Positions 7,290 through 50,369 of a stretch of 64,000 bases of DNA are shown one piece after another. Every line of letters begins with the position of its first letter. Positions within the stretch are counted from its first letter, which is position 1. The stretch lies in assembly GCF_963853765.1 (NCBI RefSeq), contig NC_088860.1, forward strand, positions 38,750,001 to 38,814,000, given 5' to 3'. Under the pieces are notes generated by a model. That model saw nothing but the letters and a program-made list of their open reading frames with translations, made no database searches and was not told the origin of the DNA. Made by a program: the position numbers and the translations under genes. The DNA is from Magallana gigas. Its lineage: Eukaryota.

Positions 7290-9368
7290 TCATGTCGCCA
7301 ATTTAAGAATGTCGAACCCTCTGATAACCTCGGGGCTCACTTTCAAATGTTTGTTCCCACTTAATAAAAGTTGTCTTGTTCTTGATAGATAGGAAGTGCG
7401 TGTGACGTTTGTAATGTTATTGTTTTGAAACCAAAGATCCAGAATTCCATCTGGTAGCTGTTCCGGAAAGTCTGTAAGTCCGCGATTCCGACAGTCTACG
7501 ATCGTTATTCCACTGACAGACCTTTCATAGCAGGAACAGGTAGCTGGGCATTTTGGAATGTCTATTTTACAATAAGTATCCGACTCGGGCACCTGGAAAA
7601 CTGGCTTGTATCGGAATTCAGCCGGAGATGAACATTTCCAGTCATTGAAGAAATACTCGTTTCCCCTCAGAAGGCCATCAGCAAGCATTCTTTTAACAAA
7701 TCTAGTGAAATGGTTGATTCGACAGTCACAATGAATGGGATTGTCGGTCAAAATGAATTGGAAATATTTTAGCAAAATCAGTAGCTTAAGCTTTTTCATC
7801 CGAGCATTTAACCGTGTTGAAAGACTAGTTCCGAAATATTTTAGATGGAGGTTGTTAATTTTGCTTCCTGTTAAATCGATCCTTTTCAGCCTCCTTGGAG
7901 ACGATTTGAGCAGGTCGGTCTCTGTTGTGGTCGAGCTTTGTGCGTTACCTTCAGCAAGCAAAGAGAAATTCAAATCCAGAAGCATCTGTGTGAAATTTTG
8001 AAAATCAATGCTGGTATATCTTAAACTCACTTCTTGCAGCGTTTTGAAATACAGAACAGCATCCGGAAATTTGCTCAGTGGGTTACCGTCCAAAATCAAG
8101 GACTTGAAAGAAACCGAGAAAGCTGGAAACATAGAATAACTGAGAGTTACTATATTGTTATACTCCAGTCTAAGTTCTTGAAGGTGGTGAAGTCTTGAGA
8201 AGGCGTGGGGTCCAATCATTGCTATGCTGTTGTTAGAGAGGTCAAGGTAAACGAGTTCCGTATTATAATAAAACATGTCATCAGAAACCACAGACAAGAG
8301 ATTTGCGTGTAAATTCATGTGTCGGAGGGCGGTTAAACCACGGAACCCATCAGTGGGAATGTTTGAAAGGTAATTCACACTCAGGTCAAGATGCTGGAGA
8401 CCTGGCAAACCAGAAAACGTGAATGAACTGAAGGAGGACAGACCATTCCCAGATAATTTCAACATGTCCAAGTATCCCTCAAATCTGAATCCTACAAGCG
8501 TTTCTATATCGTTTGAATTTAAATTAAGAACCCGTTTTCGCATGTTTGGCTGTATGATGACATTGTATCTTGTAGCAGAATCGTACAAACCAGTTTCAGA
8601 TAGCGACTTGTTGTTTTCAAAGTACATTCGTTTATTATTCCATGGGAAATTAGGCGAAGTCTTCAAAAAGGAATCGGATATTTGTAGATCTTGTAGGTTT
8701 GGAAACTTATACTTAAGATGAGAAAGATGTTGATTTAAGTCAAAACGTCTAAATTGCAACTCTTTAACATTTGGAAATGTTTCATTACATTGAAACATTT
8801 CAGAAAAATTGACTGCATTATGTTTTTCAGGCAAAATAATCCCTATGGCGTTGGCGGACTTGAGATATCTGCAGTTAGAATTTAGCAATTTTGAACCATC
8901 ACAATAAGAATACTTTTGAAGTGGATATGTATTGATGAAAGACACGTGGTTAAAACTGGCGCGGTTACTAAGTGTGTTCAAGCTATCTGTTGTCAGAAGA
9001 CAGTTTTCTACTTGAACATGAAAAACCGCGTTTGGTATAGTTGGTCTGGCGTCTGGATTAAAATGAATAGTGTAGTTTGCAGCACATCGCATGATCAAGA
9101 CAGCAACTGCCCTGTTTCCGTTAAAATGGTAACTATCTAACACATCAGCTGTGTTCAGATAGCACTCATCTGATGATGGAGGCATCAAAGAAATTCCTAC
9201 AATGTTTGTCTTCAGTGGCTGATTGTTCACTTCCATAACACTGAATGATGTAGACTTAACTTGTCTGTAAAGACACTTCGGTATTCCGCATTGAGTAACA
9301 ATGTTTGCTGTCGAAAGTTTCATAGCAATAAAGCAGAAGCACCAAATAACGTTGAAATTTCGAAGCAT
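7290..9368 (-). CDS. TLR-A: ectodomain-only (secreted-type) Toll-like LRR protein, 692 aa, no TM or TIR
   Basis: ATG at 9368. Hydrophobic signal peptide (MLRNFNVIWCFCFIAMKLSTA), Cys-rich N-terminal region, about 10 LRRs (e.g. LQHLDLSVNYL, LVYLDLSNNSI), LRRCT (NPIHCDC...DWKCSSPAEF...TYC), LRRNT (CPATCSC...IVDCRNRG), then about 2 LRRs and a stop. Collinear with the ectodomains of B, C and D. Confidence 0.88.
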   Translation of the reverse strand: MLRNFNVIWCFCFIAMKLSTANIVTQCGIPKCLYRQVKSTSFSVMEVNNQPLKTNIVGISLMPPSSDECYLNTADVLDSYHFNGNRAVAVLIMRCAANYTIHFNPDARPTIPNAVFHVQVENCLLTTDSLNTLSNRASFNHVSFINTYPLQKYSYCDGSKLLNSNCRYLKSANAIGIILPEKHNAVNFSEMFQCNETFPNVKELQFRRFDLNQHLSHLKYKFPNLQDLQISDSFLKTSPNFPWNNKRMYFENNKSLSETGLYDSATRYNVIIQPNMRKRVLNLNSNDIETLVGFRFEGYLDMLKLSGNGLSSFSSFTFSGLPGLQHLDLSVNYLSNIPTDGFRGLTALRHMNLHANLLSVVSDDMFYYNTELVYLDLSNNSIAMIGPHAFSRLHHLQELRLEYNNIVTLSYSMFPAFSVSFKSLILDGNPLSKFPDAVLYFKTLQEVSLRYTSIDFQNFTQMLLDLNFSLLAEGNAQSSTTTETDLLKSSPRRLKRIDLTGSKINNLHLKYFGTSLSTRLNARMKKLKLLILLKYFQFILTDNPIHCDCRINHFTRFVKRMLADGLLRGNEYFFNDWKCSSPAEFRYKPVFQVPESDTYCKIDIPKCPATCSCYERSVSGITIVDCRNRGLTDFPEQLPDGILDLWFQNNNITNVTRTSYLSRTRQLLLSGNKHLKVSPEVIRGFDILKLAT

Positions 9369-21001: not shown

Positions 21002-22498
21002 CTTTCATGTCATCTCTATTTGACAACACACTGAAAACACAAAAATGTTTCACACCTGTTAAATATAAAACTAAATTAAAATGATATGAGCAACTATGTT
21101 AAATTTATTTTTTGAAAATTATTATTAAATCCTTGTAAAGGTGTGATTATATAATAAATGAAAGGACAAAACCAGACAATATTGTTCTGCACTGCTGCCT
21201 CATAAACCTAAATTAAATGGAGTGTCATTAATATGTGACAAAGTTTCTGAAGGTAAATATTCTGTGCATTTATAATGCTTTTTGTCTTTTACAATGCAGT
21301 ATATTTCGATATTATTATTTTTTCAAATGATGAAAGCTTCAATTACATGCCACGTTATTCCGAAACAGAAATTGATTTTGTTAATTGAACAATTACACAA
21401 CTTTACAAATCAAAACAGTAACGGTAACTCAGTCATTATAAAATATATTGAAAATAGGAATGCTAATAAAAATCAACCACGAATATTGCCCTGATCATTA
21501 CATTGAAATATCAGACAGCTAAAGAACATTGTATGTCAATTTTATAGAACAGATTTCCTTTCTATTTAAGTTCAAAAGCATTCCATGCATTCGCTTATGT
21601 AAATGAATGAATTAAAAGTTTTTGAACATAATGTATTCACAACTAAATATTATATAAAATAACAATTTGTTTTTCAATCATCTTTTTAATTTTTTCAATC
21701 ATATATCTTTAATATTCTCTCGACCTTTGTATAAATTCATTAAATCGATATTTGCTTCGAATTCCGTTCAAAATTTAATGTCTTGGTGCATATACTATAT
21801 AGAACTTATGGCTATGAGCGAAGCAATATTAAGGCAATGGTAAGCTAACGGACATATAACAGTCAGTATGGATTAAAAAATTTCACGTTTTATACCAAAG
21901 TCCAAACAAAACAAGAGAATTATTTTTTTATTTTTTTTTATCATGCAACATAATTTTACAAATTTTAGTCTTACAACGAAAATGAGCTATTTTCATAAAA
22001 GTAGTTTTGCCATTAAAACCATGACGCCAGAGCATCAGAATGCAATTAAACGTCGTATTAATACACGAGGAGACTACACTTCAGCATTGACCGAGTATAA
22101 GTTCGGTTAATTTGGATGGCATTTACATAATCAACCTAAGGAGTATTTGAATAACTTATAAATGAAAATTATCATTTGATTAAGTATGATTTATCGCACA
22201 GATTTCATAATTCTGACAAAATACACATTTTCTCTACAAATGCATGTATATAATCTTCTCAAATCTTGTTCACCCTCTTAAAAGTTCACAGAGAAGCTAA
22301 ATTACTGGATCTGTTGTCGTATCATCCTCCCCGAAATAAAAGAATTCTTGGTTCATTATCACAGAGAAAACTTTGAATGGACCTAGAATGCATGCAGAGA
22401 TCTTTAAAAAATTATACAAAAATAAAATAATAATTTATTATAACAATTATTTGTCAGACATGAACGTACAGATATTGTATTTACGGTTATGAGCTTAT

Positions 22499-25400
22499 TT
22501 ACATTTCTTTATCATCATTTTCTGAGTCAGTATAGTTGTCACTGTCGCTGACTTCTTCACAGTTAGAAGGGTTATGAGGAGCTGTTATTTGGTAATGTTC
22601 ACAACTGACAGCACAACTAAGAGGTCCATAATACGGAATGTCAGTATGTCCATGATTTTCTAACCTCACCTCAAATACATTGACATTCTGAATGTCCGAC
22701 AAGCTTTCGTCCTCCTCTTTAACATTCAAGCACATACTGTCTTTGATGTTCATTTGTAGGGACTTGCCGCATAACAATGTTTCATCACTTACGTTCAAGT
22801 GAATGCTGCTTTGATTTACTTCAGTCCTAATTTTGTTTTCGTCTTCACTTTCGTCGGTATCTGAGGACGAATCTATTTCACTATTCTCTTCGTATGACAA
22901 GCTTGAATTGTCCTCACGAGTGTTTTGTATACTTTCATTTTCACTCATATTTAAACTGCAACTTCTAGTATCATCGCTTGGTACATCAAAGTTATTTTCG
23001 ACGACAATGTTGATTTGTGCATTGTCAGCCTCTTCCTTTAGTTCCTCATCCTCGTTAATTTCGTCTCTGTTGTTCTCTATAACGTCATCATCATTATTAA
23101 CGTCAGTGTCACTATCTTCTGATGATTCAAACAACATGCTATCTGTTACGCTTTGGATATCGTTTTCAAAATTAAATATTTCTACTATTTGAGCCTCATC
23201 CTCGACACATCGTACACAAGGTTTAGCATCTGATAAAGAATTCAAAAGTTTTTGCACAAACCATTCCTCACCGATTTGCAGAATTACGTGAGTACTTACA
23301 AGATTTTTAATTTCCTCGTCAAGCTCGTCGATATCTACATTTTCACTCAAAATAACAATCAAATGATTACTTTTGGACCTTAAAGATTTTTCAAAAGCAG
23401 TTCGAAAAGTGAAAACTGACCACTCGTCTAGCAGGTGGTTCTCTGACACAAAGAATAGTGTGTGAAGGCAGCTGTCAATTGCTTTGAGAATATTTTCTTC
23501 CTTTGATGCCCCTGGTATAAAATCCCGGTCGGGAAGCCATAAAGTGTAACCTATTTCATCAAGAACAGGTTTAATATCGTTAAGCATGCAGTTGATTTCT
23601 GTTTCGGAGTATGAAATAAAAACATGGCGATCGTAAACTTCTTGTCTTAATGTAATGTCACCGTACATGTTCATAACACAGTTTTGTATGTTAGGTAACT
23701 TCTTATCTTTCACATCGATATCACTGAATCCTTTATGAACAGGCATACAATAAAGAAGTTTTTGACCAAACAATCTATCGTTCCATTTTATAATATTACT
23801 ATTCTTAGCAAATCGTGCCATTTCTTTGTTGGTTGTTTTTCTAAATCGTACGTTATAAAGCACGGTTACAACATAATTATGTCGTAAGGTTTTAATTTTC
23901 TCTTGTGCTTCGTTCCATATAAGTTTTAACATCTGTCCTTCCAATAAAAATTCTGGAGACACCACCAATATAAGTCGTTTACTATTTTTTACGATGCTAG
24001 AAATATTTTCTTGAAAAGAAAACCCTGGAATGAAATCCCTCATGATTTCGCATACGACGTATTGACTTTTTTGCTTTTCAAGATATGTGACTATGTTGTC
24101 CATCACCCACTGTGTTAAACCTGGAACGTGAATAACAAGAACATCCACGGGTTCTCTGCCTTCATCATCATCCAAATCAAATGGATGGATGCCCAAATAG
24201 AGAAATGTAAGAACTTTTGCCTCAAATCTAAATACATACAACAAACAGATTCCTATCAAACTAAGCAGAACTGCAAGTGTACTTGCTGTGGTTGGGATGA
24301 TGCCATCTTTAATAGAGTCATAATCTTCAATGCAGACAAAGTCAACGTCTGGAATATTGATGAATTTTGTACCCTGTTCGCTCTCATTGTCAACATTACA
24401 AGTAACATCTGCGATATCCAAGATATATTTTGATTTCTTTATAATCCAGTGTTTCATCCAAAGTGACTTGCAATCACATTTAAATGGATTGTGTTTGATA
24501 TCGATGAAATCTATGTTCGTCTTCTGTAATTCTCGTGGTAACGTCACTAGATTATTGGAATCCAAGAAAAGATGTTTAAGATTCATTATTCGATCCAATG
24601 CTTTAGTTTTTATTTCGTGAATTTGGTTGCTCGAAAGTGAAAGATGTCGTGTACGATTTAAGTATTCAACATTTTCCAAAACAGACACGTTATTATGTTG
24701 AAACCATATATCAAGAATTCCATTTGGAAGTCGATTCGGAAGGAAGAAGTAACCACGATTCCGACAGTCAACGATGATAACCTTACTAACGTGTCGCTCA
24801 AAACAAGTGCAGTTATATGGACAATGTGGAACAATTTTTTTGCAGTAAGTATCTGATTCCTTGATATTGACAACCAGTTCATTCTTCATTTCGTCCGGCG
24901 TAGAACATTTTAATTTCTGAAAAATATATTCAGTTCCGGAAAACTCACCACGTTCTTTTGCCTGAAGGATAATCCTATTAAACTCGTTGATTCTGCAATC
25001 ACACGTGAATTTGATTCCGTCTAAAATGAATTCAAAGTACTTGACAATTAACAGAAAGATTTTTTGAACAACATTTTTTTTATTCTTCATTTGCACGATT
25101 GAACCAGACTCTTTGTAGCCTTCCAGCGGTGCCAGATAAAAATTTTCAAGTTTTGATCCAGACAGATCTATTATTCTGAGTTTCTCTGATGTTTTGAAAA
25201 ATACTTTATCTATAGTACCTGGTGAAGATGTGATTACACTCATTTGTAGAGAATACCAATTTATTCTGTACAACATTTCGTTGATATTACGTAGGTGAAT
25301 ATTTGTGTTCCGAAAACTCGCTTTTTCCAAAGTTCGAATGTAAAGTATAGATAAAGGAATGTTTTCTAGTGGATTCATATCAATGAGTATATTTTTCAAC

Positions 25401-26656
25401 TTTAAAGAGGCGGCAATAAACAAATTGTCTGGCAGGTGCTTTATTTCGTTAGATCTTAAATTTATTTCTTCTAAATTAGGTAATCCTCCAAACGCATTTT
25501 CTTCGACAGTTTTGATTTTATTATATGATAAATCCAAGTACTTTAAATTCTTGGTATCCGAAAATACCTCCTTAGAAATTTCTTTTAGGTTATTAGAACT
25601 CAAATCCAAATGTTGCAAATTCTGCAGCAGTTTGAATAAATTCCTTGAAATGGTATTCAGTGAATTATTTCTCAGGTTTAAACGTTCCAACTCCATAAGG
25701 CCAGTGAAAGTAGTTTCATTAATATGTCGAAGTCCATTACAAGACAAATCCAATATTAGCAAGTTTCCGTTAAATGCAAAATTTCTTAAATCGCGTATGT
25801 TATTATTTTTTAGCGTTAGTGAAGGTGTAAATTTCTTGTCAAATACAGTATTTTCCCGATTGGCACTTTTTAAATCTTTTGAAATGTTTTCTTTTGAATA
25901 TTCATTTTCTTCATTCCATGGAAACCTTGGTGGCATTGTTATGTTTGAATACGAAATTTCCAACCTCTGCAAATTTGGGAACTTTTTTTCAAGAACGGAT
26001 ATTGTTCGTAGATCCATTGGAATACCTTGCATTAATAGCGTTTTAACTGAAGTATATGAATGGGGACAACTGACTAGAAACGTGAGATTATGTTGTACAT
26101 AATTTGATGTTGATCCTTCCAGGGAAAATAAGTTTACAGATGACAACACGCCACACATATCTTTGTTCGAATGAATGCTATCACAGGGATTTTTTTGAAC
26201 GGATATTGTTGTATCCTTTAATGCTAAAGAGCTAATTTTGCCGAAGTTCTTCTTCAACACAAAATAGGAATCCAAAGTGAAACGACATGTTGAAATTTTT
26301 ATGGTCGAAAAAGTAACGTTGTTCGGAAGTATTTCATCAGAATAAAACTGCAGCCATACAGCCGATAAACATTCAAAGGAAATCAATCCATAGTCAGTAT
26401 TTACGTTCAAAAGACCAAACAATGACGTTGTGTTAATGGAACAATTGTAATTATTTTCAATAACTACTTTTTTCTCAATGTTGTTGGTTGGTGATTGGTC
26501 GCTTGTAGAGAACCCCGAAGTCCTTTCTCCATCTACGTTTATTTTACACTCCGGAAAAGAACATATGTTGCTGCCATTGACCAATAATCCACCATTAGAG
26601 ATAACGATCGTTGATGCCATGACGATGTAAAAAACATTAACATTTAAGATGTTCAT
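22499..26656 (-). CDS. TLR-B: multiple-cysteine-cluster Toll-like receptor with twin TIR domains and a long acidic tail, about 1385 aa
   Basis: The ORF track starts at a TTG (26728); the first in-frame ATG is 26656 (AAAATGA), followed by a signal-like segment. LRRs, LRRCT (FTCDC), LRRNT (CPYNCTC), LRRCT (NPFKCDC), TM at about 24230-24305 (IIPTTASTLAVLLSLIGICLLYVF), TIR1 (DVLVIH...RDFIPG, about 23740-24145), TIR2 (HVFISY...LPDRDFIPG...EWSVFTF, about 23232-23626), D/E/S-rich tail. Confidence 0.93.
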   Translation of the reverse strand: MNILNVNVFYIVMASTIVISNGGLLVNGSNICSFPECKINVDGERTSGFSTSDQSPTNNIEKKVVIENNYNCSINTTSLFGLLNVNTDYGLISFECLSAVWLQFYSDEILPNNVTFSTIKISTCRFTLDSYFVLKKNFGKISSLALKDTTISVQKNPCDSIHSNKDMCGVLSSVNLFSLEGSTSNYVQHNLTFLVSCPHSYTSVKTLLMQGIPMDLRTISVLEKKFPNLQRLEISYSNITMPPRFPWNEENEYSKENISKDLKSANRENTVFDKKFTPSLTLKNNNIRDLRNFAFNGNLLILDLSCNGLRHINETTFTGLMELERLNLRNNSLNTISRNLFKLLQNLQHLDLSSNNLKEISKEVFSDTKNLKYLDLSYNKIKTVEENAFGGLPNLEEINLRSNEIKHLPDNLFIAASLKLKNILIDMNPLENIPLSILYIRTLEKASFRNTNIHLRNINEMLYRINWYSLQMSVITSSPGTIDKVFFKTSEKLRIIDLSGSKLENFYLAPLEGYKESGSIVQMKNKKNVVQKIFLLIVKYFEFILDGIKFTCDCRINEFNRIILQAKERGEFSGTEYIFQKLKCSTPDEMKNELVVNIKESDTYCKKIVPHCPYNCTCFERHVSKVIIVDCRNRGYFFLPNRLPNGILDIWFQHNNVSVLENVEYLNRTRHLSLSSNQIHEIKTKALDRIMNLKHLFLDSNNLVTLPRELQKTNIDFIDIKHNPFKCDCKSLWMKHWIIKKSKYILDIADVTCNVDNESEQGTKFINIPDVDFVCIEDYDSIKDGIIPTTASTLAVLLSLIGICLLYVFRFEAKVLTFLYLGIHPFDLDDDEGREPVDVLVIHVPGLTQWVMDNIVTYLEKQKSQYVVCEIMRDFIPGFSFQENISSIVKNSKRLILVVSPEFLLEGQMLKLIWNEAQEKIKTLRHNYVVTVLYNVRFRKTTNKEMARFAKNSNIIKWNDRLFGQKLLYCMPVHKGFSDIDVKDKKLPNIQNCVMNMYGDITLRQEVYDRHVFISYSETEINCMLNDIKPVLDEIGYTLWLPDRDFIPGASKEENILKAIDSCLHTLFFVSENHLLDEWSVFTFRTAFEKSLRSKSNHLIVILSENVDIDELDEEIKNLVSTHVILQIGEEWFVQKLLNSLSDAKPCVRCVEDEAQIVEIFNFENDIQSVTDSMLFESSEDSDTDVNNDDDVIENNRDEINEDEELKEEADNAQINIVVENNFDVPSDDTRSCSLNMSENESIQNTREDNSSLSYEENSEIDSSSDTDESEDENKIRTEVNQSSIHLNVSDETLLCGKSLQMNIKDSMCLNVKEEDESLSDIQNVNVFEVRLENHGHTDIPYYGPLSCAVSCEHYQITAPHNPSNCEEVSDSDNYTDSENDDKEM

Positions 26657-27700
26657 TTTCACAACTGTACACAATATTAACTTGGCATGGAATTTATGCA
26701 AAACAAAATCCAGGATGTATATATCCAACAGAATTTTCTTCAGTATTTCATTTTAATATGCATAATTTATTTCGGCACTTTTGCAATAACTTTCTCACTC
26801 CTTCCAAAATTTCCCCGTCTCAATCTATATAAAATAAAACATTTAAACATAAATTAATTGTAAAACATTTCATTAAAACACGTCACCTTCTTCCCCATTT
26901 TTCTTTCGAAATGGAAAGGAAGAAGTTATTCCCTTCGCAATAAATCCACAGTATTTTAAGACGATGAAATTGTTATGCAGAATGGAAATTACAAATGGCA
27001 AATTTGCATAAGAGGACCTCGTAAAATCTTAATTAAGAACAGTGTTTGATCGCTTAGCTTTAGAAATGCACTCAAATGCTGAGTGTTGGATGTATTACTA
27101 ACTAAAAGTACAATAGCCAGCCAGAACTATAATGCATCGCCTGATCACTTGCTTTTTATTAATATGCAAGTTATTTTAATGGCAAATTCTTAGTTTTATT
27201 TATGGTGCGTAATTTTCTATTTATTGCTTTGTAATGCAAGTTTCAGGTAAATTTCGATGGGTCGAAAATATTTTTTTAAAAATTGATCGAAGCATTTCGT
27301 ATAAATCAACGATTAGTCAAAAATAAATGTAAAATTGCTTTTAAAATTTTTGTATTATAATTCTTTTAGGGGCGTAGTAACCATTTTTTATTTTCTATGT
27401 TTTAATCTCAGAACTGTTTTTTCCGAGTTGTATAAAATGTATAAAGACTGTAAAAGATACAGAACTCAGAAAATATTTTTCATGCAAACAAACATCCAAG
27501 CATCGTGCCATGGTGCTTTTGATTGTATTTTAAATACCAATTGGTTAAAGGTTCTTCTTGCTAATTCGATATGAATACAGATAAATAGTATTTAGTGTTT
27601 TTCATTTTCAAATATGTTTGATATCTTAAAATTCTTTTTAGCATTAGAAATGTAAATATAACTATATACAATACAAAAATATATCATGAAGTTATGCAAA

Positions 27701-46673: not shown

Positions 46674-49600
46674 TCATTGTTTCTTTCTTTCATTTTCATT
46701 GATATCAATAACATCAGTTTCGTCCTTTTGAAAAGCTCTATTTTGATAGTGTTGTGTTCCGTTCAAATGAATATCTGTCAACTGAACATGACCATTCATT
46801 TTCCCATTTTGGATTTGGATTCCATTTTTCTTTTCCTCATTTTCTATCATATCGGCAACTATCCTGCTTAGTCCGTCTTCCATCTTCGTTTTGTGCAAGT
46901 TTTCGAAGTCCACAAAATTATTGTCGTCGTGTTTAATGTACAACTCGTGGTTTTCGATATCAGGGAGGGCATTCAATAAACGTCTGATAAAACCCTTCTC
47001 ACTCACTTTAAGAGAAACGTGTGTCTTCACGTAAGCTCGTACCTCCTCCCCCATTGTTTCCACATTCACATCATCACCTAGAACCACAATGAGGTGATTA
47101 CATTTTTCTCGCATTGACTTTTCACTGGCGGATCTGAAAGTAAAAACTGACCACTCATTATCTAACTGTTCTCCAGAAAGAAGAAATATGGTATGTAAAC
47201 AGTTGTCAATCGCTTTTAGGACATTTTCCTCTTTTGGTGCTCCAGGAATAAAGTCCCTATCTGGTAGGCATAGTGTAAACCCATTGTCTTCTATAATTGG
47301 TCTCAGTTCGTTCATGACGTACCCCATATCGCTTTCGCAATACGACAGGAAAGCATGTCTTTCATACATCTCCGCGTCCGTGACATCGTTCCCATACATG
47401 TTCTGAATAAGATATTTTAAGTCAGGTAGACTTTTGACTCTCATGTCGTCGCCAGTTATTTGTGGCATGCAGTATAAAAGTTTTTCTTGAAAGAAACTTT
47501 GATTAGCATCAATGTAACGACCTCTTTTGATATATTGCTGCAAATCTTTGTCTGGAATTTCTTTTAAATTCACATCGTATGACACAACAATGGCGTAGTT
47601 AGTTTTAAGAGCTTTAATCTTTTCTTGGGTCTCATTCCATGCAATTTTTAAGATGTCGTCGTTTATGAATTCCTTTGAGAGCACGATTACTATTCTTTTA
47701 CTATGTTTCACCAACGTGGCAATATTTTCTTGGTATGAAAATCCTGCTACAAAATCTCGCATCATTTCGCAAACTAAATAATGAGCACTACTGAATTCCA
47801 AATATTCAACAACATTTTCCATTACCCATTTCGTCGCTGCTGGTGAATGTACCACTAGTACATCTACAATTTCTTTACAGTCCTTATCCTGATCAAAGGG
47901 GTGAAATCCAAGGTATATATAAAGTAGGACCTTGATTTCAAGCCTATAAATGTACATCAGGCAAATGGTTATAATCATCAAGACTAAAACAACAGATGCA
48001 ATCACACTTGGAACAAGAACCTTATTATAAGAATCAAAGTTTTCCAGGCATACAAACTCGTTGTCTGGTACACTTAGAAATTGTCTTCCATTTTCGTGTT
48101 CTTTATCAACGTTACACGTAACTTTTTGCGAATTAATGGTTATATTTGGTTTATTTAACATCCAATGTTTCAACCAAACCGTATTGCAATCACATTTAAA
48201 GGGATTATCTTCTATATTAAGTTTTCCTGAGAAATAGTCCTGGATTTCAGAAGGCAAAGATACCAAAAAATTAAAGTTCAAAAATAGTTCCTGAAGGTTT
48301 TTCAATTGACGGAACACACTAGACTCAATTTGTGCAAGACTATTATGAGACAAATAAAATGAACGAATGTGGTTGAGGTATATTCTATTACTTAATGTTG
48401 TTATGTTGTTTTGATGAAACCAGAGGTCCAAGCTACCAGAAGGTAACATTTTAGGTAAAGAGCGAAACCCTCTATTACGACAGTCTACGATGGTTATATT
48501 GCTGAGAGATCTTTCATAACATGAGCAGTTGAATGGGCAAAGTGGTATATTTTTCTCGCAATATGTGTCCTTTTCGGGGACTTCTAGTAAACTGTGGCTT
48601 TCAAACTCAGCTGGCCATTGGCATTTCCAATCGAAGCTTTTATCAGCTTCAAGAATATTGTCTTTTATTAAAAAGTTCAATACTTTTGAAATTTGGTTAA
48701 TTCTGCAATCACAGCGAAGAGGATTGTCTTCCAAAATAAATTTGAAAGTTTTAAACACCAGAAGAAGATTTTGGTGCAGTTGTTCAATTTCTTTTGATTT
48801 TATCTCGTTAACCTCATAGTTTGGTATTTCCAAATTGTCAATTTTGCTTCCAGTTAAATCCAAGATAACTGAGTGTTTATCGTCGATTGGCTGTCTGACA
48901 ACGAAATTTTGGTTTTCTACTGTTGTTTCGTTATTTACTCCATCTTGAATCGGATTTCTTGTAAAGTCTAAAATTGTTTGAGTAAAGTTTTTAAATTTCG
49001 CATTTGTGTTTTTCAAACTTATTTTTTCTAATAATTGAAGTGAGAACACAACCTCTGGGACCTCGGAGAACCCATTACCGTCAAGAATAAGCTTCTTAAA
49101 TTCTATAGAGCGACTTGGGAAAACGTTTGCATGTATTGCCGCAATTTTATTATATTCCAAATGAAGTTCCCGTAAGAGCCTCAAATGAGAAAAAGTGTTT
49201 TGTTCAATGTTGCTTATTTTGTTTCCGGAAAAGTCCAAGTACACCAAATTCAAATTATCAGAAAAATGATCGGATGACAGATAACTGATATGGTTGTTTT
49301 TAAAATCAAGATGTCGAAGTTCATTTAAGCCTTTAAAAGAGTCTGTTGGAACATGTACCAACTCATTAAAACTTAGATCCAAATACTGAAACCCTCTAAG
49401 ATTTCTAAAGGTATCATTACTGATAGTATGAAGTCTATTTCTGGATAAGTCGAGTTTATGTAGAAATCCTCTGAAAGTGTGGTTGGAAAGATCCGTAATT
49501 TGGTTTTTGCTTAGTGACATTGTTTTCATATGCATGTCATTAGGTACTTGAATGTGAAAAATTTCAGCGAATTCATAGTGTTCTGTATCGGTTCTGGACA

Positions 49601-50369
49601 TGTTGAAACTTAAATGCAACCAAACATCACTCCATGGAAAATCTGGAGGTTGCATCAGGTCGGAGTTTTCAATGGAGAGGACTTGTAATCTCGGAAACAT
49701 ACTGGGTAACTGAGAGAGATACTGCTTCATTGGGAACTTTACAAAGTTAATTTCTTTCATGTAAGGAAAGGTGGTGTTGCAATAAAAAAGCTCCTTGATA
49801 GATTTGACTGAGTTTGTTAAATTTTTAGGCATATACGTGATACCTTCTAGGGTATTCCACACTTTACAGCTATTTCTATGAATTGGTTCTCCGTCACAGT
49901 ATTTCATATCTAATGATGGATATTTTGTGTAGAAGTTGACCATAAATATCTTGAATCGGTTTTGAATCGGATACAGTTGCTCCTGGGATATTGTACAATC
50001 CTTAATCTGTATATATGACATCACATTTGGTAAAAATGGCCTGTGGTCGTCAGTAAAATATACTTCAACATCTTTATGACACAAGAACACTAGTACTGCA
50101 TAAACAGGTTTGGTGTCAAAGTTGAAGGCGTCGATAAATTCTTTCGTATCCACATAACACCTGGAATCAGTGTAGGGTTCCATGAGAAATAAAAATAATC
50201 CGAACATTTTGGTTTCCATAGTTTCATTGAGATAGTGCATGGTATTTGGTGCTGGCTGTTCACGTAAGTAAAATTCACATTTAGGAATTCTACAGTTGGT
50301 TACGTTTTGAAGATAAACCACCGAAAACAGACTACAAACGCACATAACTCGTAACAGTATTGGCTCCAT
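46674..50369 (-). CDS. TLR-D: multiple-cysteine-cluster Toll-like receptor with twin TIR domains, 1231 aa
   Basis: Signal peptide (MEPILLRVMCVCSLFSVVYL), LRRs, NPLRCDC / CPFNCSC / NPFKCDC clusters, TM at about 47945-48020, TIR1 (DVLVVH...RDFVAG), TIR2 (HAFLSY...LPDRDFIPG), N/E/D-rich tail. Confidence 0.95.
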   Translation of the reverse strand: MEPILLRVMCVCSLFSVVYLQNVTNCRIPKCEFYLREQPAPNTMHYLNETMETKMFGLFLFLMEPYTDSRCYVDTKEFIDAFNFDTKPVYAVLVFLCHKDVEVYFTDDHRPFLPNVMSYIQIKDCTISQEQLYPIQNRFKIFMVNFYTKYPSLDMKYCDGEPIHRNSCKVWNTLEGITYMPKNLTNSVKSIKELFYCNTTFPYMKEINFVKFPMKQYLSQLPSMFPRLQVLSIENSDLMQPPDFPWSDVWLHLSFNMSRTDTEHYEFAEIFHIQVPNDMHMKTMSLSKNQITDLSNHTFRGFLHKLDLSRNRLHTISNDTFRNLRGFQYLDLSFNELVHVPTDSFKGLNELRHLDFKNNHISYLSSDHFSDNLNLVYLDFSGNKISNIEQNTFSHLRLLRELHLEYNKIAAIHANVFPSRSIEFKKLILDGNGFSEVPEVVFSLQLLEKISLKNTNAKFKNFTQTILDFTRNPIQDGVNNETTVENQNFVVRQPIDDKHSVILDLTGSKIDNLEIPNYEVNEIKSKEIEQLHQNLLLVFKTFKFILEDNPLRCDCRINQISKVLNFLIKDNILEADKSFDWKCQWPAEFESHSLLEVPEKDTYCEKNIPLCPFNCSCYERSLSNITIVDCRNRGFRSLPKMLPSGSLDLWFHQNNITTLSNRIYLNHIRSFYLSHNSLAQIESSVFRQLKNLQELFLNFNFLVSLPSEIQDYFSGKLNIEDNPFKCDCNTVWLKHWMLNKPNITINSQKVTCNVDKEHENGRQFLSVPDNEFVCLENFDSYNKVLVPSVIASVVLVLMIITICLMYIYRLEIKVLLYIYLGFHPFDQDKDCKEIVDVLVVHSPAATKWVMENVVEYLEFSSAHYLVCEMMRDFVAGFSYQENIATLVKHSKRIVIVLSKEFINDDILKIAWNETQEKIKALKTNYAIVVSYDVNLKEIPDKDLQQYIKRGRYIDANQSFFQEKLLYCMPQITGDDMRVKSLPDLKYLIQNMYGNDVTDAEMYERHAFLSYCESDMGYVMNELRPIIEDNGFTLCLPDRDFIPGAPKEENVLKAIDNCLHTIFLLSGEQLDNEWSVFTFRSASEKSMREKCNHLIVVLGDDVNVETMGEEVRAYVKTHVSLKVSEKGFIRRLLNALPDIENHELYIKHDDNNFVDFENLHKTKMEDGLSRIVADMIENEEKKNGIQIQNGKMNGHVQLTDIHLNGTQHYQNRAFQKDETDVIDINENERKKQ

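What the first reader, a model, noticed from the sequence alone, without database searches (positions are those of the whole stretch)
23232..24145. Two structurally distinct TIR domains in tandem on one receptor chain
B, C and D each have a membrane-proximal TIR1 with a degenerate Box1 (DVLV[IVL]H instead of YDAFISY) and an unusual alphaC region (K[LVI][IA]WNE[AT]QEKIK). A short linker (MP....K.LP.I) leads to TIR2, which has canonical H[AV]F[IVL]SY and LPDRDF[IL]PG. Each TIR type is conserved across the paralogues while TIR1 and TIR2 differ strongly, which points to an old duplication with division of labour. Inference: a tandem TIR could pre-seed a TIR filament without dimerisation, or TIR1 could auto-inhibit TIR2.
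Basis: partly seen in the sequence, partly recalled or inferred. Interest (0 to 1): 0.8.

Follow-up and report, generated by a model that had tools for sequence, protein, structure and literature searches.

The report
Known twin-TIR Toll-like receptor genes
Three neighbouring oyster Toll-like receptor genes each carry two signalling (TIR) domains in a row, a real and very old bivalve feature that has been described and named since 2014-2017 as "twin-TIR TLR" or "Toll-2" and has already been tested with deletion constructs.

Summary
Gene B (minus strand, coding 22499-26656) and its paralogues C and D are single-exon, P-type Toll-like receptors with a leucine-rich-repeat ectodomain, a membrane helix, TIR1, a linker of about 30 residues, then TIR2.

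- **Both are TIR domains.** Each passes Pfam's TIR threshold alone, and each AlphaFold model matches solved TIR domains equally well (Z 15.8 and 15.7).
- **They share a fold but not much sequence.** Identity is 21-27%, so they are not structurally distinct. TIR2 is the canonical one; TIR1 is the fast-diverged copy and has usually lost the BB-loop proline.
- **The duplication is old.** In 58 bivalve proteins, TIR1 and TIR2 form two separate clades, each with 100/100 support.
- **The architecture is already published.** It appears as HcToll-2 (2014), the "Toll-2 family" (Cao 2016), "twin-TIR TLR" (Gerdol 2017, defined on Pacific oyster loci) and "SPP-2TIR" (Saco 2023). Gene B's cytoplasmic region is 40% identical end to end to the database entry "Twin-TIR-TLR [Cyclina sinensis]".
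- **The proposed deletion experiment exists.** Cao 2016 found tandem > TIR-2-only > TIR-1-only in a reporter assay. That argues against auto-inhibition by TIR1.

Verdict: real and ordinary, already known; only the structural mechanism remains open.

The parts
22499..26656 (-). Gene B: single-exon coding region of a twin-TIR Toll-like receptor (1385 codons from the first ATG, stop included). A gene caller's product of 1373 aa (P0001) starts 12 codons later.
   Evidence: ORF. Pfam LRR_8, TIR and TIR_2. P0001 is 100% identical. RNA-type contigs are collinear over 21931-26825 and 22490-26681 with no joints.
26825..26826 (-). AG of a 3' splice acceptor after a pyrimidine-rich tract. The coding exon begins at 26824, so the 5' UTR lies on an upstream exon.
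   Evidence: Contigs of two runs leave the window at 26825-26828 (loose ends). The sequence ttttattttatatag|attg was read.
24233..24301 (-). Transmembrane helix of B (approximate).
   Evidence: Strongest hydrophobic 21-residue windows start at residues 810-815 of the 1409-codon frame.
24170..24193 (-). Juxtamembrane motif G-I-H-P-F-D-x-D, nearly invariant in the family.
   Evidence: Nearly invariant columns G11 H13 P14 F15 D16 D18 of alignment A3; alignment blocks.
23738..24157 (-). TIR1 of B. It is membrane-proximal and diverged: Box 1 is DVLVIH, Box 2 is RDFIPG, and helix C carries WNEAQEKIK.
   Evidence: Pfam PF01582 37.2 bits when scanned alone. AlphaFold pLDDT 84, pTM 0.81. All 50 listed PDB matches are TIR domains, the best at Z 15.8.
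23642..23737 (-). Inter-TIR linker, poorly conserved. The gap between the two domain envelopes is 18-57 residues across the family, median 28.5.
   Evidence: pLDDT is below 50 at model residues 166-173 and 187-197. Lengths.
23225..23641 (-). TIR2 of B. It is canonical: Box 1 is HVFISY, Box 2 is LPDRDFIPG, and helix C carries DEWSVFTF.
   Evidence: Pfam PF13676 47.3 bits when scanned alone. Profile against PDB: TLR6 at E 1.5e-23. Structural Z 15.7.
22502..23224 (-). C-terminal tail of 241 residues, rich in Asp/Glu (27%) and Ser/Asn (24%). This length is specific to the B lineage.
   Evidence: An in-frame 15-base deletion allele at 22610 appears in one run.
37137..40916 (-). Gene C, a twin-TIR paralogue. 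TIR1 is 37953-38369 and TIR2 is 37449-37865.
   Evidence: Both TIR domains are identical to those of P0009.
46674..50369 (-). Gene D, a twin-TIR paralogue. TIR1 is 47460-47876 and TIR2 is 46956-47372.

Best explanation
**What it is (about 0.95).** B, C and D are members of the bivalve twin-TIR Toll-like receptor family, also published as Toll-2 and SPP-2TIR. They are type-I membrane receptors. The ectodomain is P-type, meaning it has several cysteine clusters. The cytoplasmic part has two TIR domains that arose from one domain duplication before the living bivalve orders diverged.

**How it most likely works (about 0.5-0.6; inferred from conservation plus one published assay).**
- TIR2 kept the ancestral Toll/Tollo-like sequence: Box 1, the BB-loop proline and helix C. 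It is the main adaptor-recruiting domain, presumably for MyD88.
- TIR1 diverged fast just after the duplication. It then froze under purifying selection and lost Box 1 and usually the BB-loop proline.
- TIR1 acts as an auxiliary TIR surface held next to TIR2. It raises signalling output by supplying extra TIR-TIR contacts, so a ligand-induced receptor dimer presents four TIR domains instead of two.
- TIR1 is weakly active alone and is not an inhibitor.
For: - **Domains:** Pfam scores for each TIR scanned alone pass the curated cut-offs. Both models have TIR folds at Z 15.7-15.8.
- **Family membership:** B is 40% identical over 347 aligned columns, E 6e-86, to nr "Twin-TIR-TLR [Cyclina sinensis]".
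- **Breadth:** 58 tandem proteins come from oysters, pearl oysters, scallops, mussels, unionids, venerids and Mya.
- **Phylogeny:** the TIR1 and TIR2 clades each have 100/100 support. Stem lengths are 1.71 against 0.69 substitutions per site.
- **TIR2 is the canonical copy:** its profile hits TLR6 at 1.5e-23, while TIR1's best hit is 4e-12. Single-TIR Tollo-type receptors score 117-142 bits on the TIR2 model against 58-89 on the TIR1 model.
- **BB-loop residue:** Pro in 46 of 58 TIR2 but only 6 of 58 TIR1.
- **Selection:** dN in both TIRs is about half that of the ectodomain, with dS saturated.
- **Conserved surfaces:** invariant columns cluster in the BB loop and helix C of both domains.
- **Expression:** one collinear RNA-type contig spans both TIRs, and poly-A RNA reads lie in the expected orientation.
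- **Function:** in Hyriopsis Toll-2-2, full length > TIR-2-only > TIR-1-only on an antimicrobial-peptide reporter (PMC4929906).
Against: - The functional data come from a unionid orthologue over-expressed in Drosophila S2 cells with a shrimp promoter, not from this oyster gene. No ligand, adaptor or assembly was shown.
- No coordinates or PAE of the tandem model were available. The intramolecular TIR1-TIR2 contact is only hinted at by pTM 0.79 for the 336-residue model.
- The order of branching among TIR1, TIR2 and the nearest single-TIR receptors is unresolved (AU p 0.47).
Confidence: 0.6

Rival explanations
1. Division of labour between adaptors. TIR1 and TIR2 each recruit a different cytoplasmic TIR adaptor, for example different paralogues of the expanded bivalve MyD88 / TIR-adaptor repertoire. 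One receptor would then drive two pathways.
For: Each domain has its own invariant surface motifs, kept across all bivalve orders. TIR1 has TxWV, SKR and W..AQEKIK. TIR2 has DEWS.FTF and EK..R. The two share only 21% identity. Both retained some reporter activity when tested alone.
Against: No adaptor binding has been tested. The published read-out was a single reporter on which the two domains added up, which fits simple cooperation equally well.
Confidence: 0.25
2. TIR1 is an in-cis inhibitor. It masks TIR2 until ligand binding.
For: TIR1 lacks Box 1 and usually the BB-loop proline. The tandem model's pTM of 0.79 suggests the two domains may pack together.
Against: Removing TIR-1 from Hyriopsis Toll-2-2 reduced reporter activity rather than increasing it. 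TIR-1 alone had some activity. The tandem receptor was stronger than a single-TIR Toll (PMC4929906).
Confidence: 0.1
3. Artefact. The two TIRs belong to two genes or alternative exons, or one of them is a decaying pseudo-domain.
For: None found.
Against: One uninterrupted frame encodes both domains in three paralogues. A 5163-nt RNA-type contig is collinear across both with no joints. Both domains pass Pfam alone. Both are conserved in 58 proteins, with dN far below the saturated dS.
Confidence: 0.01

Closest known systems
Twin-TIR TLR / Toll-2 family / SPP-2TIR of bivalves. This covers HcToll-2 of Hyriopsis cumingii (Ren 2014), Cao 2016 (PMC4929906), Gerdol 2017 as cited in PMC5845394 and PMC6836662, Saco 2023 (PMC10279657), and nr "Twin-TIR-TLR [Cyclina sinensis]".
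   Same: Same architecture: multi-cysteine-cluster LRR ectodomain, membrane helix, TIR1, linker, TIR2. Same TIR1 and TIR2 clades. B is 40% identical across the whole cytoplasmic module to the Cyclina entry. The class was named on Pacific oyster loci.
   Different: Nothing of kind. B belongs to an oyster sub-lineage that keeps the BB-loop proline in TIR1 and has a 241-residue acidic, Ser/Asn-rich tail.
Single-TIR P-type Toll receptors (insect Tollo/Toll-8 type and the nearest single-TIR receptors, P0127-P0133).
   Same: Same ectodomain type. TIR2 resembles their TIR closely: they score 117-142 bits on the TIR2 model, and the unionid query P0019 is 46% identical to Anopheles Tollo over 41% of its two-TIR region.
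   Different: They have one TIR. Here an extra, diverged TIR sits between the membrane and the canonical TIR.
Vertebrate TLR1/2/6/10 TIR domains and the MyD88/MAL TIR assemblies.
   Same: Same fold for both domains: Z 13.6-15.4 for TLR1, TLR2, TLR6 and MyD88. The BB loop and helix C are the conserved surfaces. From general knowledge, these are the surfaces used in MAL/MyD88 filaments.
   Different: Those receptors present one TIR per chain. No solved structure shows two TIRs on one receptor chain.

Membership tests
Twin-TIR TLR (Toll-2 / SPP-2TIR) | Type-I receptor with an LRR ectodomain of the multi-cysteine-cluster (P) type and one transmembrane helix. | tested here: met
   LRR_8, LRR_4 and LRR_9 hits. 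An internal LRRCT-like FTCDC is followed by an LRRNT-like CPYNCTC, and a second LRRCT, NPFKCDC, precedes the membrane helix (read in the translation). A weak Pfam LRRNT hit lies at the equivalent place in D. Hydrophobic helix.
Twin-TIR TLR (Toll-2 / SPP-2TIR) | Two TIR domains in tandem on the cytoplasmic side, each recognisable on its own. | tested here: met
   Separate Pfam scans. Separate fold matches at Z 15.8 and 15.7.
Twin-TIR TLR (Toll-2 / SPP-2TIR) | Orthology of each TIR to the corresponding TIR of named family members. | tested here: met
   TIR1 and TIR2 of B, C and D fall in the two 100/100 clades that also hold the Cyclina "Twin-TIR-TLR" P0115. BLASTP against P0115 gives 40% identity, E 6e-86.
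Twin-TIR TLR (Toll-2 / SPP-2TIR) | Signals to antimicrobial-peptide or NF-kB type promoters, with both TIRs contributing. | not testable with these tools
   Only published for Hyriopsis Toll-2-2 (PMC4929906).
Enzymatic (NAD-cleaving) TIR domains, SARM1 type | Catalytic glutamate in the helix-C region. | not tested
   The fold matches to SARM1 TIR (Z 13.3-14.4) give no residue-level alignment, and SARM1 was not among the sequence hits. No claim is made.

The most novel reading that the evidence does not exclude
TIR1 and TIR2 pack against each other within one chain, in the same geometry as neighbouring subunits of a MyD88/MAL-type TIR assembly. Each receptor chain would then carry a pre-formed two-subunit seed. 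A ligand-induced dimer would give a four-TIR nucleus and lower the threshold for adaptor polymerisation. That would be a structural answer to how bivalves tuned Toll signalling, and a natural tethered TIR pair useful for structural work. The only hint here is the high pTM (0.79) of the two-domain model. The interface could not be inspected.
Probability: 0.2. Interest if true: 0.5.

Novelty: already known. Interest (0 to 1): 0.15.

Why it matters
As a discovery it does not matter. The architecture, its restriction to bivalves, the view that TIR-1 is the extra domain, and a TIR1-only / TIR2-only / tandem reporter series are all in the literature.

What remains open is the structural mechanism: how two TIRs on one chain change the assembly of the signalling complex.
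- One ancient duplication was followed by strongly asymmetric divergence.
- TIR1 lost its BB-loop proline in about 90% of family members.
- The BB-loop and helix-C surfaces are conserved in both domains.

Tried and rejected
- **Model coordinates:** I looked for coordinates or PAE of the tandem AlphaFold model to inspect the TIR1-TIR2 interface. None are exposed in /data, so the interface is not analysed.
- **Whole-model fold searches:** Foldseek and ESM Atlas searches with the tandem model returned single-TIR matches. The few rows aligned over most of the model (334-379 columns) had rmsd 16-21 Å, so nothing can be read about the relative placement of the two domains. TIR1 therefore had to be folded alone.
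- **Hyriopsis sequences:** I searched the supplements of Cao 2016 to tie their constructs directly to my alignment. No sequences are held as text. The link therefore rests on unionid family members (Sinanodonta, Potamilus) in my set.
- **Branching order:** I tried to decide whether TIR1 and TIR2 are each other's closest relatives or whether a single-TIR receptor branches between them. This is unresolved (backbone supports 54-63; the AU test does not reject TIR1+TIR2 as one clade, p 0.47).
- **dN/dS:** pairwise values between B, C and D could not be computed because synonymous sites are saturated. Only dN is compared.
- **RNA runs:** run X22 gave no reads, and X20 gave only 10 because about 1% of that run was read.
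- **NADase-type catalytic residue:** not assessed, since no residue-level alignment to SARM1 was available.
- **Large representative protein search:** deliberately not run, because the protein is not left open by the other searches.

Full report
**What is in the window**

Four long open frames lie on the minus strand:
- A, 7290-9368
- B, 22499-26728
- C, 37137-40916
- D, 46674-50369

All four carry leucine-rich repeats. B, C and D also carry TIR hits in two stretches each. The finding's interval 23232-24145 lies in B. The quoted motifs sit exactly where stated: DVLVIH at 24145, WNEAQEK at 23917, HVFISY at 23626 and LPDRDF at 23536. C and D have the same motifs in the same order. A hydrophobic helix precedes TIR1 in all three. 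The window has no N.

**Are both really TIR domains?**

- Scanned alone, TIR1 of B, C and D scores 37.2, 34.5 and 29.9 bits on PF01582, whose cut-off is 21.3. TIR2 scores 38-47 bits on PF01582 or PF13676.
- An AlphaFold model of TIR1 alone, built on 34 homologues, has pLDDT 84 and pTM 0.81. It shows the full alternating strand-helix TIR pattern.
- All 50 listed PDB matches for TIR1 are TIR domains covering residues 2-140. The best are IL-1RAcPb at Z 15.8 and MyD88 at Z 15.2.
- In the tandem model (pLDDT 79.8, pTM 0.79), TIR2 matches Hydra TRR-2 and MyD88 at Z 15.4-15.7.

The two domains therefore share one fold and are equally good TIRs structurally. They differ in sequence: 27% identity over 96 residues within B and 21% profile to profile at 99.1% probability. 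TIR1 does have a normal Box 2, RDFIPG in B.

**Family and age**

A word-index search with B's cytoplasmic part found 31 two-TIR proteins; every one that a source names is from a bivalve. They come from Saccostrea, Pinctada, scallops, Mytilus, unionids, Mercenaria and Mya.

A second search from a unionid member added more. These include the nr entry named "Twin-TIR-TLR [Cyclina sinensis]" and single-TIR Tollo-type receptors. B's cytoplasmic module is 40% identical to the Cyclina protein, E 6e-86.

I built models from the TIR1 and TIR2 alignments (A1 and A2). They classify every domain cleanly:
- About 200 bits on a domain's own model.
- About 50 bits on the other model.
- Single-TIR Tollo-type receptors score 117-142 bits on the TIR2 model and 58-89 on the TIR1 model.

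Trees gave the following:
- With 34 proteins, the TIR1 clade has 100/100 support and the TIR2 clade 98/88.
- With 58 proteins plus P-type and V-type single-TIR outgroups, both clades have 100/100 support.
- In the 34-protein tree, unionids, scallops and the two oyster sub-lineages each form supported groups in both clades; deeper order is unresolved.
- The TIR1 stem is 1.71 substitutions per site and the TIR2 stem is 0.69.

So there was one duplication before the sampled bivalve orders split, followed by fast change in TIR1, then stasis in both. The branching order among TIR1, TIR2 and the nearest single-TIR receptors is unresolved. A tree holding TIR1 and TIR2 together is not rejected (AU p 0.47).

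**Constraint and conserved surfaces**

Between B, C and D, synonymous sites are saturated. dN is 0.19-0.42 in TIR1, 0.24-0.35 in TIR2 and 0.66-0.70 in the ectodomain.

Invariant columns cluster in the BB loop and helix C of both domains. They also cluster in a juxtamembrane G-[IL]-H-P-F-D-x-D motif.

The BB-loop residue after RDFx differs sharply between the two domains:

| Domain | Pro | Val | Ile | Ala | Other or unread |
|---|---|---|---|---|---|
| TIR2 (58) | 46 | 4 | 2 | 1 | 5 |
| TIR1 (58) | 6 | 21 | 15 | 15 | 1 |

B belongs to the minority that keeps Pro in TIR1. The TIR2 profile matches solved TLR6 and TLR1 TIRs at E 1e-23, while TIR1's best match is 4e-12. TIR2 is thus the conserved, canonical copy and TIR1 the derived one.

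**Expression and gene structure**

- Small contig sets that look like transcriptome assemblies hold about 90% of the gene.
- A 5163-nt contig is collinear with 21931-26825, and another with 22490-26681. Neither has a joint inside the coding region.
- Both leave the genome at 26825-26828, exactly at a pyrimidine tract plus AG. This is a 5'-UTR intron and supports the contigs being RNA.
- Ten poly-A RNA reads lie on the gene, all in the orientation expected for a minus-strand transcript.
- Both TIRs are therefore on one mRNA.

**What is already known**

- Cao et al. 2016 (PMC4929906) described the "Toll-2 family" with tandem TIRs in many molluscs. They called the membrane-proximal one TIR-1, the extra domain, and the distal one TIR-2, shared with single-TIR Toll-I.
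- The same paper showed that full-length Hcu_Toll-2-2 activates a reporter more than a TIR-2-only construct, which in turn beats a TIR-1-only construct.
- Gerdol et al. 2017 named "twin-TIR" Tolls on two Pacific oyster loci. The term is used for Loripes and in a general review.
- Saco et al. 2023 call them SPP-2TIR and infer an internal TIR duplication.

**Mechanism**

*Shown here:*
- Two intact TIR folds lie on one chain.
- Both are under constraint.
- TIR2 is canonical and TIR1 is derived.

*Shown elsewhere:*
- Both domains contribute positively to signalling, TIR2 more than TIR1.

*Inferred:*
- TIR2 is the main adaptor-recruiting domain.
- TIR1 adds TIR-TIR contact surface, so a receptor dimer offers four TIRs.
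- Auto-inhibition by TIR1 is disfavoured by the deletion data.
- Separate adaptors for the two domains remain possible.
- An intramolecular "seed" is hinted at only by the high pTM of the tandem model and could not be examined.

**Verdict**

This is a real feature, correctly observed, and ordinary for a bivalve genome. It is already known. Within this genome's own notes, the scan holds related notes on the same window and on another TLR array. None of them duplicates this point.

Noticed in passing
window 7290-9368 (-): Gene A is an intact 692-codon ectodomain-only relative. It ends inside the second LRR block. A tblastn search with C's membrane-plus-cytoplasmic part finds no TM or TIR remnant anywhere else in the window.
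   Followed up: partly
window 22502-23224 (-), and P0002-P0006: The B lineage of oysters carries a tail of about 233-264 residues after TIR2, rich in Asp/Glu and Ser/Asn. C, D and their oyster orthologues P0007 and P0119 have 89-103 residues, and unionids or venerids about 30. One run carries an in-frame 15-base deletion allele at 22610.
   Followed up: partly
window 38235-38252 and family-wide: The BB-loop proline of TIR1 is replaced by Val, Ile or Ala in 51 of 58 family members (one further could not be read). It is Ala in C and D and Pro in B. TIR2 keeps Pro in 46 of 58.
   Followed up: yes
window 24170-24193 (-): A juxtamembrane motif G-[IL]-H-P-F-D-x-D between the membrane helix and TIR1 is nearly invariant across all sampled bivalve orders. 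No known function was looked up.
   Followed up: no
P0005 (Mercenaria mercenaria, 2344 aa): This database protein contains two complete twin-TIR receptors end to end, with four RDFxxG loops. It is probably a fused gene model of two tandem genes.
   Followed up: no
window 26824-26826 (-): A splice acceptor lies just upstream of the coding exon, so the 5' UTR is on a separate exon outside 21800-27600.
   Followed up: partly
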